A stretch of DNA of 52,026 nt from Girardia tigrina. Lineage: Eukaryota. This document shows, one piece after another, positions 14,501 through 23,500 of this stretch (the stretch's first letter is position 1; every line of letters begins with the position of its first letter). The position numbers were made by a program, and so were the translations under genes. The notes beneath the pieces were generated by a model. That model was not told the DNA's origin. It was given only the letters and a program-made list of their open reading frames with translations, and did not search any database. The stretch is from contig MQRK01214676.1 of assembly GCA_001938485.1 (NCBI GenBank), forward strand, positions 62,001 through 114,026. Direction: 5' to 3'.

Positions 14501-17500
14501 ATGAACGAAGTCTAAATGAACGAAGAACAGCCAAATGATATTGCAATCCGAACCAGAAAACCACGAGTTAGAATTACAATCGACATGCTGAACACCTTCG
14601 TGAGAATGTTAAACAGTGGGGATTCATCTCGTGATATTGCAACACGGTTGAATTTATCACCTTCAACCGTGAAAAAAATAAAATTTAAAATTCACGAATG
14701 TGAAGAAAACAGTATACTTTTGGATACCTTGATCAAGAAACCCGGGCGAAAACCACTCAAAAACAACGAGACACTGCCGAAATTAGCAGAAATAGTGCAC
14801 GATGATTGCACTCTTACGCAAATTGGGATGAAAAAAAAACTCGAGGAACAAAATATTTATGTTTCACAGCCCACAACTTCTCTTTACTTAAGGAAGTTGA
14901 ATATCTCGCGAGAAAGACTAAAGAAGTTGAGTTTTAATGCAAATTCAGTTGAAAATGAAATGAGAAGGCGTGTGTATGCAAGAGAGATCTATCCATTGAG
15001 AAATAGAACTCTGTTGTTTCTTGATGAAACGGGGTTTAACTTGCATACATCTAGCCACTATGGATATTCACCGATCAATTCTGATGCTGTGAAAAACGTA
15101 CCGGGTAACCGCGGTAAAAACTTGTCTTTAGTTGCATTAATTTCCATGAGAAACATTTTAATATTTAGAAATTTATTTAAACGTCTTATAACGTAATGGT
15201 GTTAATTAAATAATTTATATTAAATTCTAAGGTTTTAAGAGGAAAGTAAAAAAATATAAATTTTAATAAATAATTGGGAAATTAAATCATAATAAATAAT
15301 TTAGAAATATAAAGAAAAATTTTTCGAATAAACATTATTAAAAAGACAGAAATTAAAACTAATTGGAATGACGTAAAATTGGGAAACACCTTCAAAGAGT
15401 TATGATGACTCTAGATGGAATGTTAATAAATATTTTCATAATAATTGTGTCAGTGCTCTTGACAATAACTTTTTTCATCAAATTATAATCATAATTACTC
15501 TTAAAATGAACTTCAAAAGAAAACTTATAAACTAATTCAAAACCCGTTTAGACCTTCATTCTATTAAACCTGACCTTTTATTTTATCTCTAAAGAAATGT
15601 TAATTGATCAAAGATCAAAGTGTATTATTATTGAGATTATAATTTTTATTTTACAAAATTAATATTTATTTAATAAATCTTCTTAAATATAAATAGATTT
15701 CGTAAAAATAACAGAAAATATAATTAATAAAATACTGGTTAAATATTAAAGTACAAGAGATTGATGACATTAGTTAAATAATAATTATTACTACTATTCA
15801 TAACTAAAAATGTATTCATGAACTCCCAATAGTACCACTAAGTACGGCGAAATAAATAAAATCATGCAGTAACAGCTGACCTGGATTAAAATATAGAAAG
15901 TGACTGTGAAAAACAGAGGAATAATGATCCAAGGGTTTGGCAAAGTAACCATAATAAGGACGACAGTTGCCGACAATGCCGTGACAAGGAAACCATTGAT
16001 GTAATTCGGAAGCATGGTTCCGACAGAATTGAGATCACTTGAGAATCGGTTGATGAATCTTCCAACAGGGATCGCCTCAAACAGTCGCATCGACAAATGC
16101 ATCACGTTGTGTAACAAAATCTTATGAAGACTCTCGGCTGACTTGACGATAGCAAGAGCAAACGCCGCAGACGATAACAGTTGGAAGAAAGCTACAAAGG
16201 ATACATTATAATAATAACTTAAAAATTCCCATTGTAATAAATTAATTATAGAAGAATTCGTATTCAAAAATATTTTTCATTTCATGGAAACTACTATGAA
16301 CGTCTTAGATAAGTTTGTGTGACAAGAATACGCGGAATCCCGACCAAAAAGACTATTTTCAACGTATCTCAAACCAACACAGGAGGGAAACAGAAAATGA
16401 ATAGAAATAGCAAGAAAGAATTGATTCTCAGAGAAGAATTCGAAGGAAGAGAACCATCTGACGTTCAAAATCAATAGTATCCTAGTTTATATCGCTTCTT
16501 GAATGGGATATTTGGCAGTTCTTTTGACTTACACAAAGGATTTCACCAAATTGCCATAGGAGCAGTATAAGAAGAACGTACGTTTAACATGTCCTCCATT
16601 AACGCACCTACATTTTCTATTATAAAAGACCTTATATTAATAATGGTTGAATGTTATTGTTAATAATTAATAATAAACAAATGTTACTATTTATCATTAA
16701 TAATAGAAAATTGTGGAAACTGACAGAATTTAAGTCTCTTGGGAAGGTCTTGGTTAAAAAACATAACTAACCCTAAACCTTTATACCAAAACAGGCTTAA
16801 TAATACATAGATACACTTGAGAAAGACCAAGGAATTCAGCAGACTTTACATAACCCAAATTATTTTTTATCAAGGTGTAAGAATATCTTTATCCTACTTC
16901 AATGAACATTGATTCAAGAAAGGAAGATATATTTGCAGGATAATTATTTGATACAATTTAACACATTGACTGCTGTTGACATCATGCACCGAACGTCTGC
17001 TACGCGCGCTACGAATTTTGTTTAGCATGTCCATGCAGTCATTTTCTAACAAAAGGAACTAATGGGTTTTTCTTTTATTATCNNNNNNNNNNNNNNNNNN
17101 NNNNNNNNNNNNNNNNNNNNNNNNNNNNNNNNNNNNNNNNNNNNNNNNTGAGTACGAGATATCTCGTACTTAGCGTCTTAGTAATGTAAGCCAAAGTACG
17201 AGATATCTCGTACTTAGCGTCTAACTAATGAATATTGAAGTACGAGATATCTCGTACTCAGCATTCAATGTGTTAATATTATAAAATAATTATTTATTCG
17301 GAAATAAATATTTAATTGATAACAGTATTAGATATATTTGATTGGCAAATGAAGAATAACAGTTCCAAATGTTTCATCATCATTCTCAAATACATTCTTA
17401 CAGCATCATCAACAAAGATGATATCGAAATAATGTGAAAGCACAAGTTTTATCATTTTTATTTCATTGAACAAGGAACAACTAGCTGAAAGAAGGGATCA

Positions 17501-20500: not shown

Positions 20501-23500
20501 TTAGAGCTCCACTAATTTCTAAAGAAAACTGAGGAGTGTTTAAGTGGTTTTTCATGGCAGTCGTATTTCCACCTTTAATCGAAATTTTACTTGTACATCC
20601 ACCTATTTGACACTGTGATTCAGTTGATGTTATTTTCTTGAAATAATTCCAGACTCTCACTGTTTCGACAACATTTAATGGGCTACAAAAATCATATATT
20701 ATAAAATGAGAAAACCTTAAAATATTTATTTTATGTTTATTTACATGGTTTACTTAAATGTCTAAATTTTACAAAGCTGAAAATTTTAATAAAATAATAA
20801 ATGTTTTTCTAATCACTATAAATCACTTTTTAAATTTGTTTCCACAAAAACTCAAAATATTGAAATGATAAAACAAAAATAATTTGGCATTATTTTTTTA
20901 GCATCAACATTAAAAAAAACCAAAGCCTGCTATTTTCTTATAAAATTAGCAAAATTACAAGTACCTCATTGACTGTCGATATTGTCGTTAACCTTTAACC
21001 GGATAGAATGTTTTTGTAACATAAACGGATAGAAGAGTCTGAAGGCTCTTAAGCTGAAAATTAAATGTATACATAAGAAATCCTTGATAATTCGAACGTT
21101 CTTTTAATAAAATTCATGATTAGTTAAAAAAAGTGCTAAAAAATTGAATTTGAATTAGTATTTTGATTTTGATTTACGTACGATTAATAAAGAGTCCAAG
21201 AGACTCTTCTATCCGGTTAAAGGGTAAATATAAATACAAATGTAAGATTAAATTTGAATCACACTAAAATATAAAATTCCAATCACAAAAAATCAAAAAA
21301 ATAAACACAATGAAAGACAATGGAAACATTCTTTCGTTGGAAAACGAAAGAAACACGTTTTTCATTTACACAATTTTACCAAGGTAGATAACCCTCATTG
21401 GCATTTTAGCCCATATTCGTGATCGATCCCAACATTTAGTGAAGAATTTCCTTTTTTCTAATTGATAAACACTCGCAAATCATGCATCAAAAAGCTAGCA
21501 TCATATCCAGGTAGAGACGAAATATTAATCAAAGGGGTAAATAACACCGGGAAATCTGATCTCCCAAAAGCTACAATAAAACTTGTACCTGAAGAGGCGT
21601 ATAAAGTATGCAGGTCATTATTAAAACTAAAGCGAAAATTAAAATCTGTTGCCAAGATGAAGCAGACCATAATAGTATAAAAATAATCCCACAGGTGTCC
21701 GTAACGCAGCGCAGTAAACCGGAAATAGTGAAGTGGATCACCAAATCAAGTTGTGCACAATCATCACTTATTCTTGTCAGCATGGAACCGCTACTAATTC
21801 TACAGAAAACTAAATATGGCCAGTGGAATATCGAAGAGGTAAATTTAACGAAGAACCGATCGCTGGCTCTGAGCCCGATCAAAATAGAACTGGCCCCACA
21901 CATGATATTTAGAATTCCTATAAACGCAAAACAAATGGGAACAGCATTGATATTAATTGCAACTCAATCACTGACCTTGGCCAAGACCAAACACTCCGTA
22001 AATCCCCAAATTCAAATCTCGTTCTCGGGAAAGAAACTGTTCGAGCTCTTTTATTTCAGCTTTGTTAGAATCGTTGGACATTCGTAAATCACGTAATTGT
22101 CTTGAGAAATTGGCGGATAACTTTGACTGATTTGCCCACCGAACGAGCCACAAATTAGAACCGAGTGAAAATCCCTGGGTTACTATAAACAACATTAGTA
22201 TCAACGCCGCCAACCAATATCCCATTGAACGTAAATAGGCGAGGTAAACAGCTAATTTCACCTACAACAGGATTATAAAAATCCTTAAATGAATGTCCTC
22301 ACATTTCCTTCTTTTGAAAGTTCAGCTTCAATAAGTTTATTTCCACTTTTCGGAATCTCCGTTACGCCCATCTTTTCAAGTTCTTTTTTACATTCTTTTT
22401 CCTTTATTGAATCTTTCTCTTTCGAATCCTAAAAAACATTAAACATTTTTGAAATAACTAAATAAAAACTGATTTGAAAAATTTTTTCTATTGGAAAAAT
22501 ACCGTACTCAAAACTAAATAAATATTATTAGAACTATTAGACTTTATTTCTGGATCATATTTAATAATTATTATTATTATTTTCTATCCATACCACCATA
22601 GAAATGACAATACAAACATTTATTGCAAATGCCTGCAATAAAATAATATTGTCTGTCTGTCAGTTTGTCCAAATTATTGCGACAATTTTGTCATTTTATA
22701 AGACCAAATGAATAAAGCAAATTAAATTTTATTTTATACAATCGATTTAAAAAATTTTTAATTAACGTTGTATTAATTAATAAATTACCTAAAGGATATT
22801 TTTAAAATGTTGAAAATATTTCTTAATTACCGAAAAATGTTATTATTATATTAAATTATTATTATTATATTAAAATTAATCCGAATATATTTCTATAAAT
22901 TTAATTATTTTAGAGAGACTAAATTATATTGGGGCGCGTCAAAGGATAAAATTAAATTAGATCCAGAATCCGCACTTACATTCGACCAACTCCGACACTG
23001 GCTTACGTACCTGTGGGCAATATTGAAACAAACTTGGAAATATTAGACTCAAGTTCATTTGATGAACAAAAAAGGTTATTCAATAACTAATGGATTATTT
23101 TAAAGATAATTACACCGGAAGACCCAAGAGCGATTCTCTCCATTACAAACAGACAATTTGGAAAGGTATTCTGCTATACTAAAATGAGTCACTTAAAGTA
23201 ACAATTCCGTCGAAGGATGGTATCGTAAATTATAGGGTCGAATCAATCCAAAATTGAAAGATAAACCAAGAGTCAATGATTTTATTGCAAATATTTTTCC
23301 TTAGAAATAATTGTTTTTCAATTCATTTTTTCTATTCTTTTTATTAGATTGCTTTATATTAGCGGTTTTGGGATGCTACCATAGAATTAATACTAGTGAA
23401 TGATAATCGTAAATATCATTTACGATTGCAGACCAGATTCTGATGGTTTTCTTTCTATTAATAAAGTTTATTTTGTGCTGAGTTACATTTCTTTAAAGTT

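What the first reader, a model, noticed from the sequence alone, without database searches (positions are those of the whole stretch)
15881..21917. Mutually exclusive exon array that swaps TM13-TM15 of an MRP1/ABCC1 drug pump
Seen: between constitutive exons 21976-22261 (ends phase 1) and 7376-7575 (starts phase 0) there are three intact homologous exons: A 329 nt, B 314 nt, C 311 nt. Each has AG/GT(GC) boundaries, phase 1 to 0, and ends in YxxxQ. Including none or two shifts the frame, so exactly one must be used. The copies are far more divergent from each other than the conserved flanking exons are from known MRPs. Established: Drosophila MRP has mutually exclusive exon 4 and exon 8 clusters, and human MRP1 TM14 (e.g. 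E1089) sets drug specificity; the aligned position here is F in A, S in B and N in C. Inference: this is an apparently separate single-exon array that yields transporter isoforms with different substrate pockets from one gene.
Basis: partly seen in the sequence, partly recalled or inferred. Interest (0 to 1): 0.92.

Follow-up and report, generated by a model that had tools for sequence, protein, structure and literature searches.

The report
Swappable exons in a drug pump
One drug-efflux pump gene (MRP1/ABCC1) of what is probably a flatworm holds three alternative copies of the same exon, and at least two are really spliced in one at a time, a trick already described for this gene in flies, sea urchins and other animals.

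Summary
A single full-length MRP1/ABCC1 gene carries three open, homologous phase 1-to-0 exons (A 329, B 314, C 311 nt) for TM13-TM15; only single inclusion keeps the frame. RNA-derived contigs show upstream-to-A (three studies), A-to-downstream and upstream-to-C joints. The last spans the assembly gap, which sits in an intronic repeat. B was not seen spliced, but all three exons have open orthologues in a related species (71/43/68% identity). The intron tails of A and C pair with one shared docking site 135-175 nt before the downstream exon; B has no such selector.

The same 311-nt exon is arrayed in sea urchin, scallop and a fish, with tandem copies also in lancelet and snail proteins. Insect cluster 2 (the fly's exon 8, by inference) uses the same acceptor with an earlier donor. 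MRP exon arrays with downstream docking sites are published (Yue 2017). Different substrate specificity is inferred, not shown. What is left as unusual: no canonical copy, and exon A's rewritten but conserved coupling loop. Earlier scan notes exist on this same DNA only. New member of a known kind.

The parts
21976..22261 (-). Constitutive upstream exon (TM12 region, ends in phase 1)
   Evidence: Open frame; 62% to P0007; spliced to A and to C in RNA contigs
21589..21917 (-). Variant exon A, 329 nt; most divergent, rewritten coupling loop
   Evidence: Joint over the 58-nt GT-AG intron in X5, X6, X10; joint to the downstream exon in X7; 71% to orthologue in P0007
21536..21575 (-). Predicted selector A (pairs with the docking site)
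   Evidence: -43.5 kcal/mol, z -7.4, best of about 1400 windows; z -10 against shuffles
18310..18623 (-). Variant exon B, 314 nt, GC donor; splicing not observed
   Evidence: Open frame; 43-47% to orthologue in P0001; no joint in four runs; no selector for the docking site
16958..17277 (.). Multi-copy element with terminal inverted repeats and TTAA ends that contains the 66-N gap
   Evidence: TIRs; 41 scored matches of the flank in the genome; contigs of related organisms stop matching at 17276
15881..16191 (-). Variant exon C, 311 nt
   Evidence: X7 loose end at 21976 equals the first 30 nt of C; 68-69% to orthologue in P0001
15799..15841 (-). Predicted selector C (pairs with the same docking site)
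   Evidence: -29.7 kcal/mol, z -4.3, second-best window; z -3.0 against shuffles
7706..7749 (-). Predicted shared docking site upstream of the downstream exon's acceptor
   Evidence: Top-ranked partner of both the A tail and the C tail in unbiased scans; both helices use the same letters
7376..7575 (-). Constitutive downstream exon (starts RFYV, phase 0)
   Evidence: X7 loose end at 21589 equals its first 30 nt; 88% to P0001

Best explanation
A tandem array of three copies of the ancestral TM13-TM15 exon in one long MRP1/ABCC1-type gene, used one at a time. Shown: single gene, three open copies, frame rule, joints upstream-A, A-downstream and upstream-C. Inferred: the tail of A or of C pairs with one docking site just before the downstream exon, loops out what lies between and brings that donor to the acceptor; only one can pair at a time. 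Double or zero inclusion gives premature stops and is probably removed by nonsense-mediated decay. B, with a GC donor and no selector, is a rare or tissue-restricted variant. Each isoform swaps TM13, the coupling loop after it, TM14 and TM15, which probably changes substrate preference or ATPase coupling.
For: Anatomy and frame test; one copy of every other exon; joints in RNA-derived contigs; orthologous pairs A/A', B/B', C/C' with 100/95+ support; docking-site scans; the same exon arrayed in other phyla; published downstream docking in MRP1 clusters (PMC6071210); TM14 residue M1093 matters for vincristine export in human ABCC1 (PMC12647609).
Against: No joint into or out of B; the C-to-downstream joint lay outside the stretch laid; the runs are only guessed to be RNA and are contigs, which show presence, not absence; the pairings are predictions without covariation data; no transport assay.
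Confidence: 0.85

Rival explanations
1. Only A and C are working alternatives; B is a silent or decaying copy in this species.
For: No B joint in four runs, and unspliced contigs run through B; GC donor; no selector; lowest identity to its orthologue (43-47%).
Against: B is fully open with good splice sites here, its orthologue is open too, and it is the copy closest to canonical MRP units (34%). Contigs drop rare variants; one fly cluster-2 exon likewise had zero reads in PMC4588896.
Confidence: 0.25
2. Exclusivity comes only from splice-site competition plus nonsense-mediated decay; the predicted pairings are chance.
For: The frame rule alone removes double inclusion; C's pairing is moderate (z -3.0 against shuffles); B lacks a selector.
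Against: The same site ranks first for two independent tails, and the two best partners in 14 kb lie 14 and 40 nt behind the donors of the two exons seen spliced.
Confidence: 0.15
3. The three exons belong to different genes or haplotypes joined by misassembly at the gaps.
For: Fragmented assembly (255,254 contigs); gaps at 17083-17148 and 11547-11931.
Against: RNA joints cross both gaps (upstream to C crosses the first; A to downstream crosses both); no other exon is duplicated; a related species' predicted protein has B-like, C-like and downstream segments in the same order; A has a single match in the genome.
Confidence: 0.02
4. Isoform A is not a pump with another specificity but a poorly coupled or regulatory form.
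For: A and its orthologue replace the canonical 'H..LL.N..R.P..FFDTTP.GR..NRF.KD' pattern in the same way, in the loop that by general knowledge of ABCC structure contacts a nucleotide-binding domain.
Against: G, R and the acidic positions are kept, and the helix-short helix-helix-helix layout is predicted intact (though driven by a canonical alignment). No functional data.
Confidence: 0.15

Closest known systems
Metazoan MRP/MRP1 tandem exon arrays with competing RNA pairings (Yue et al. 2017, RNA Biol 14:1399; read only through PMC6071210)
   Same: Tandem duplicated exon in an MRP gene, mutually exclusive use, docking site in the intron downstream of the cluster. From memory, its abstract lists Platyhelminthes among the phyla; I could not open the paper.
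   Different: I could not check whether this species, these three copies or a flatworm docking site are covered there.
Drosophila MRP (CG6214) cluster 2, exon 8 (8 variants; PMC4588896) and its insect orthologues
   Same: Same acceptor position and phase, covers TM13, the coupling loop and part of TM14 in Culex, Anopheles, Nasonia and beetles. Mapping to the fly exon itself is inferred; no Drosophila sequence was aligned.
   Different: Insect unit is about 221 nt and stops inside TM14; here the unit is 311-329 nt and includes TM15. Three copies instead of 5-8, and no second cluster in this gene.
Sea urchin ABCC1 alternative exon (Gokirmak et al. 2016, AJP Cell Physiol 310:C911; title seen, text not held)
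   Same: A sea urchin gene (Diadema) has three 311-nt phase 1-to-0 copies of the same exon. From memory, the paper shows by efflux assays that splicing of exon 22 changes function.
   Different: The copies here are more divergent from the canonical unit (22-34% against 34-42%).

Membership tests
Long MRP (ABCC1-like) transporter | TMD0-TMD1-NBD1-TMD2-NBD2 in one gene | tested here: met
   Profile positions 12-1543 covered in order on the minus strand of one contig
Long MRP (ABCC1-like) transporter | ATP-driven export of glutathione conjugates or drugs | not testable with these tools
   No assay
Mutually exclusive exon cluster | Tandem homologous exons of like length and the same phases between two constitutive exons | tested here: met
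Mutually exclusive exon cluster | At least two variants spliced in as alternatives | tested here: met
   Upstream-A, A-downstream and upstream-C joints
Mutually exclusive exon cluster | Every variant is used | tested here: inconclusive
   No joint for B; a protein search with B found nothing
Mutually exclusive exon cluster | No stable transcript with two variants or none | tested here: inconclusive
   No A-B joint in the stretch laid, but contigs cannot show absence; all such forms have early stops
Metazoan MRP TM13-TM15 exon array | Duplicated unit starts at the conserved phase-1 acceptor after TM12 | tested here: met
   Same boundary in sea urchin, scallop, fish and insects
Docking site-selector splicing | Several selectors complementary to one docking site | tested here: met
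   A and C tails; not found for B
Docking site-selector splicing | Conservation or compensatory change across species; effect of mutation | not testable with these tools
   No genomic locus of the related species was on record

The most novel reading that the evidence does not exclude
In this lineage no canonical copy remains, and isoform A, with a rewritten but conserved coupling loop, changes how ATP use is coupled to transport (or makes a non-pumping regulatory form) rather than only the substrate pocket; splicing would then switch the pump's mode.
Probability: 0.15. Interest if true: 0.65.

Novelty: new member of a known kind. Interest (0 to 1): 0.38.

Why it matters
It adds a case with RNA support and a clear predicted docking site to a known, repeatedly seen way of diversifying one detoxification pump by splicing instead of gene duplication. 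Three natural TM13-TM15 swaps of only 17-26% identity in one fixed protein background make a clean test set for what these helices and the coupling loop do in ABCC1 pumps, and matter for toxicology work in planarians if the organism is one.

Tried and rejected
Fourth or fossil exons: frameshift-tolerant profile scan of 7576-21975 gave only A, B, C (103-135 bits); next best 19.8 against a shuffle maximum of 19.7 on average; DNA and protein comparisons of single-copy intron stretches were not significant. A hidden canonical copy in a gap: the 66-N gap is too short by its estimate and lies in a repeat; the 385-N gap lies between long inverted repeats; neither was filled, so a copy in the larger gap is unlikely but not excluded. 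B's best pairing (17030-16976) falls inside the multi-copy element and was rejected as chance. Tree: deep branches unresolved; one clade for the six flatworm-type exons neither found nor rejected (p-AU 0.185), so single versus repeated origin is undecided. Homologue searches with B and with P0001 found no transcript fragments. Contigs for P0001, P0007 and P0160 were not on record. Structure search with the exon A model gave no significant match. The swordfish pair is near-identical and may be a local duplication or assembly artefact, so I do not count it. Yue 2017 and Gokirmak 2014/2016 texts were not held.

Full report
Observation. The window is part of a 142-kb contig in a 1.43-Gb, 255,254-contig animal assembly. 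On the minus strand lies one long MRP gene: a profile of 19 full-length MRP1/2 proteins is covered in order from position 12 to 1543, once everywhere except 1036-1141, which is hit three times, at 21589-21917 (A), 18310-18623 (B) and 15881-16191 (C). All three are open, have AG acceptors and GT donors (GC for B), run from phase 1 to phase 0 and end in YxxxQ; each matches Pfam ABC_membrane. Only single inclusion keeps the frame; none, two or three exons give early stops. The copies share 17-26% identity, and 22-34% with 96 MRP units of other animals, against 65% for the next constitutive exon. The organism is probably a freshwater flatworm: earlier scan notes on this genome say so (unchecked) and the assembly size fits my memory of a planarian assembly; no tool named it.

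The gap. The 66-N gap lies in the B-C intron, inside a 320-nt element with terminal inverted repeats and TTAA ends; its flank has at least 40 other copies in the genome, and contigs of related organisms stop matching at the element's edge, 17276. I laid reads only on the N-free stretch 17160-23100 and did not fill or look up any gap.

Splicing. In three runs from three studies (X5, X6, X10; RNA by guess, but they show precise GT-AG joints) the upstream exon is joined to A over the 58-nt intron. In run X7 one contig leaves A at 21589 and continues with the first 30 nt of the downstream exon, skipping B and C; another leaves the upstream exon at 21976 and continues with the first 30 nt of C, skipping A and B and crossing the gap (letters checked). 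So A and C are alternative forms of one gene. The A contig has 21-29% of the upstream exon's depth, a rough figure only. No joint to B appears and unspliced contigs run through it; contigs drop rare forms, so this is not absence. The C-to-downstream joint lay outside the stretch.

Conservation. Two unnamed predicted proteins of a related species hold orthologues: P0007 has the upstream exon (62%) followed by A (71%); P0001 has B (43-47%), C (68-69%) and the downstream exon (88%) in that order. The pairs group with 100/95+ support. The array therefore predates that split and all three frames stayed open, which points to selection on B as well. dN/dS could not be computed because their DNA was not on record.

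Mechanism. Unbiased duplex scans of the 150 nt behind each donor gave the same best partner for A and for C: 7706-7749, 135-175 nt before the downstream acceptor. Scanning that site against 14 kb ranks the A tail first (-43.5 kcal/mol, z -7.4) and the C tail second (-29.7, z -4.3); against shuffles z is -10 and -3.0, and both helices use the same letters. This is the downstream docking-site layout described for insect Mhc, 14-3-3zeta and MRP1 (PMC6071210). B has no selector, which with its GC donor fits rare use. The pairing is a prediction; no covariation or mutation data exist here. Fossil exons claimed in other notes were not supported.

Protein effect. By match ranges to human MRP1 the variable part spans about residues 1027-1130: TM13, the coupling loop, TM14 and TM15. 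The E1089 position is F/S/N here but F/G/H in the orthologues, so it is not conserved in B and C; the M1093 position is G/S/G in both species. In human ABCC1, M1093A alters vincristine export whereas E1089A does little (PMC12647609). Different specificity is thus plausible but inferred. Exon A departs most: it and its orthologue lack the usual histidine, the FFDTTP motif and the NRF motif in the same way, while the predicted helix layout is kept (the model leans on a canonical alignment, and a structure search found nothing significant).

Comparison with known systems. The same exon, 311 nt and phase 1 to 0, is tandemly repeated in a sea urchin (3 copies), a scallop (at least 7 intact plus broken ones) and a grenadier fish (311 and 314 nt), and predicted proteins of a lancelet and two snails carry tandem copies. 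Insect MRP1 isoforms vary from the same acceptor over about 74 residues (221-nt exons); this is the second of two variable regions and by inference the fly's eight-exon cluster (PMC4588896). So the array is not separate from the fly's in place, only longer at the 3' end. [quoted passage not shown] I could not read either paper; that Yue 2017 names Platyhelminthes is from memory. My tree cannot decide between one old array and repeated origins.

Verdict. Interest 0.38. The open, more novel point is whether isoform A alters coupling rather than specificity (probability about 0.15).

Noticed in passing
L018:50208-50518 and 51458-51771: A teleost (Coryphaenoides) long-MRP gene has two divergent, open copies of the same exon (311 and 314 nt) with proper splice sites; a vertebrate case of the array may be less well known than the invertebrate ones.
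   Followed up: partly
L022:38542-54749: Scallop MRP1-like gene holds at least seven intact copies plus broken ones, partly as a recent three-exon block duplication.
   Followed up: partly
window 18719-18751 with 15815-15848: A stretch upstream of exon B can pair with selector C (-22 kcal/mol, z -3.4 among 36 comparisons); it could compete with docking, or be chance.
   Followed up: partly
window 11200-12171: Long inverted repeats (91 nt at 99%, 138 nt at 93%) enclose the 385-N gap: a foldback-like element in the C-to-downstream intron.
   Followed up: no
window 8360-9744 (+): FLYWCH plus MULE transposase remains in the C-to-downstream intron.
   Followed up: partly
window 14516-15196 (+) and 4290-5392 (-): Tc1/mariner-type transposase remains (HTH and DDE_3) in two introns.
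   Followed up: partly
window 21976-22261: The upstream exon has an insertion of about 20-30 residues in the extracellular loop after TM12 compared with other MRP1s, shared with the related species (P0007).
   Followed up: no
window 10150-10760, 16200-16950, 17280-18300: Single-copy intron stretches of unknown nature; not detectably decayed exon copies.
   Followed up: partly
G000, about 20 other places: Many other ABCC paralogues or alleles in the genome have a canonical version of this segment inside a larger exon, that is, without the two flanking introns.
   Followed up: no
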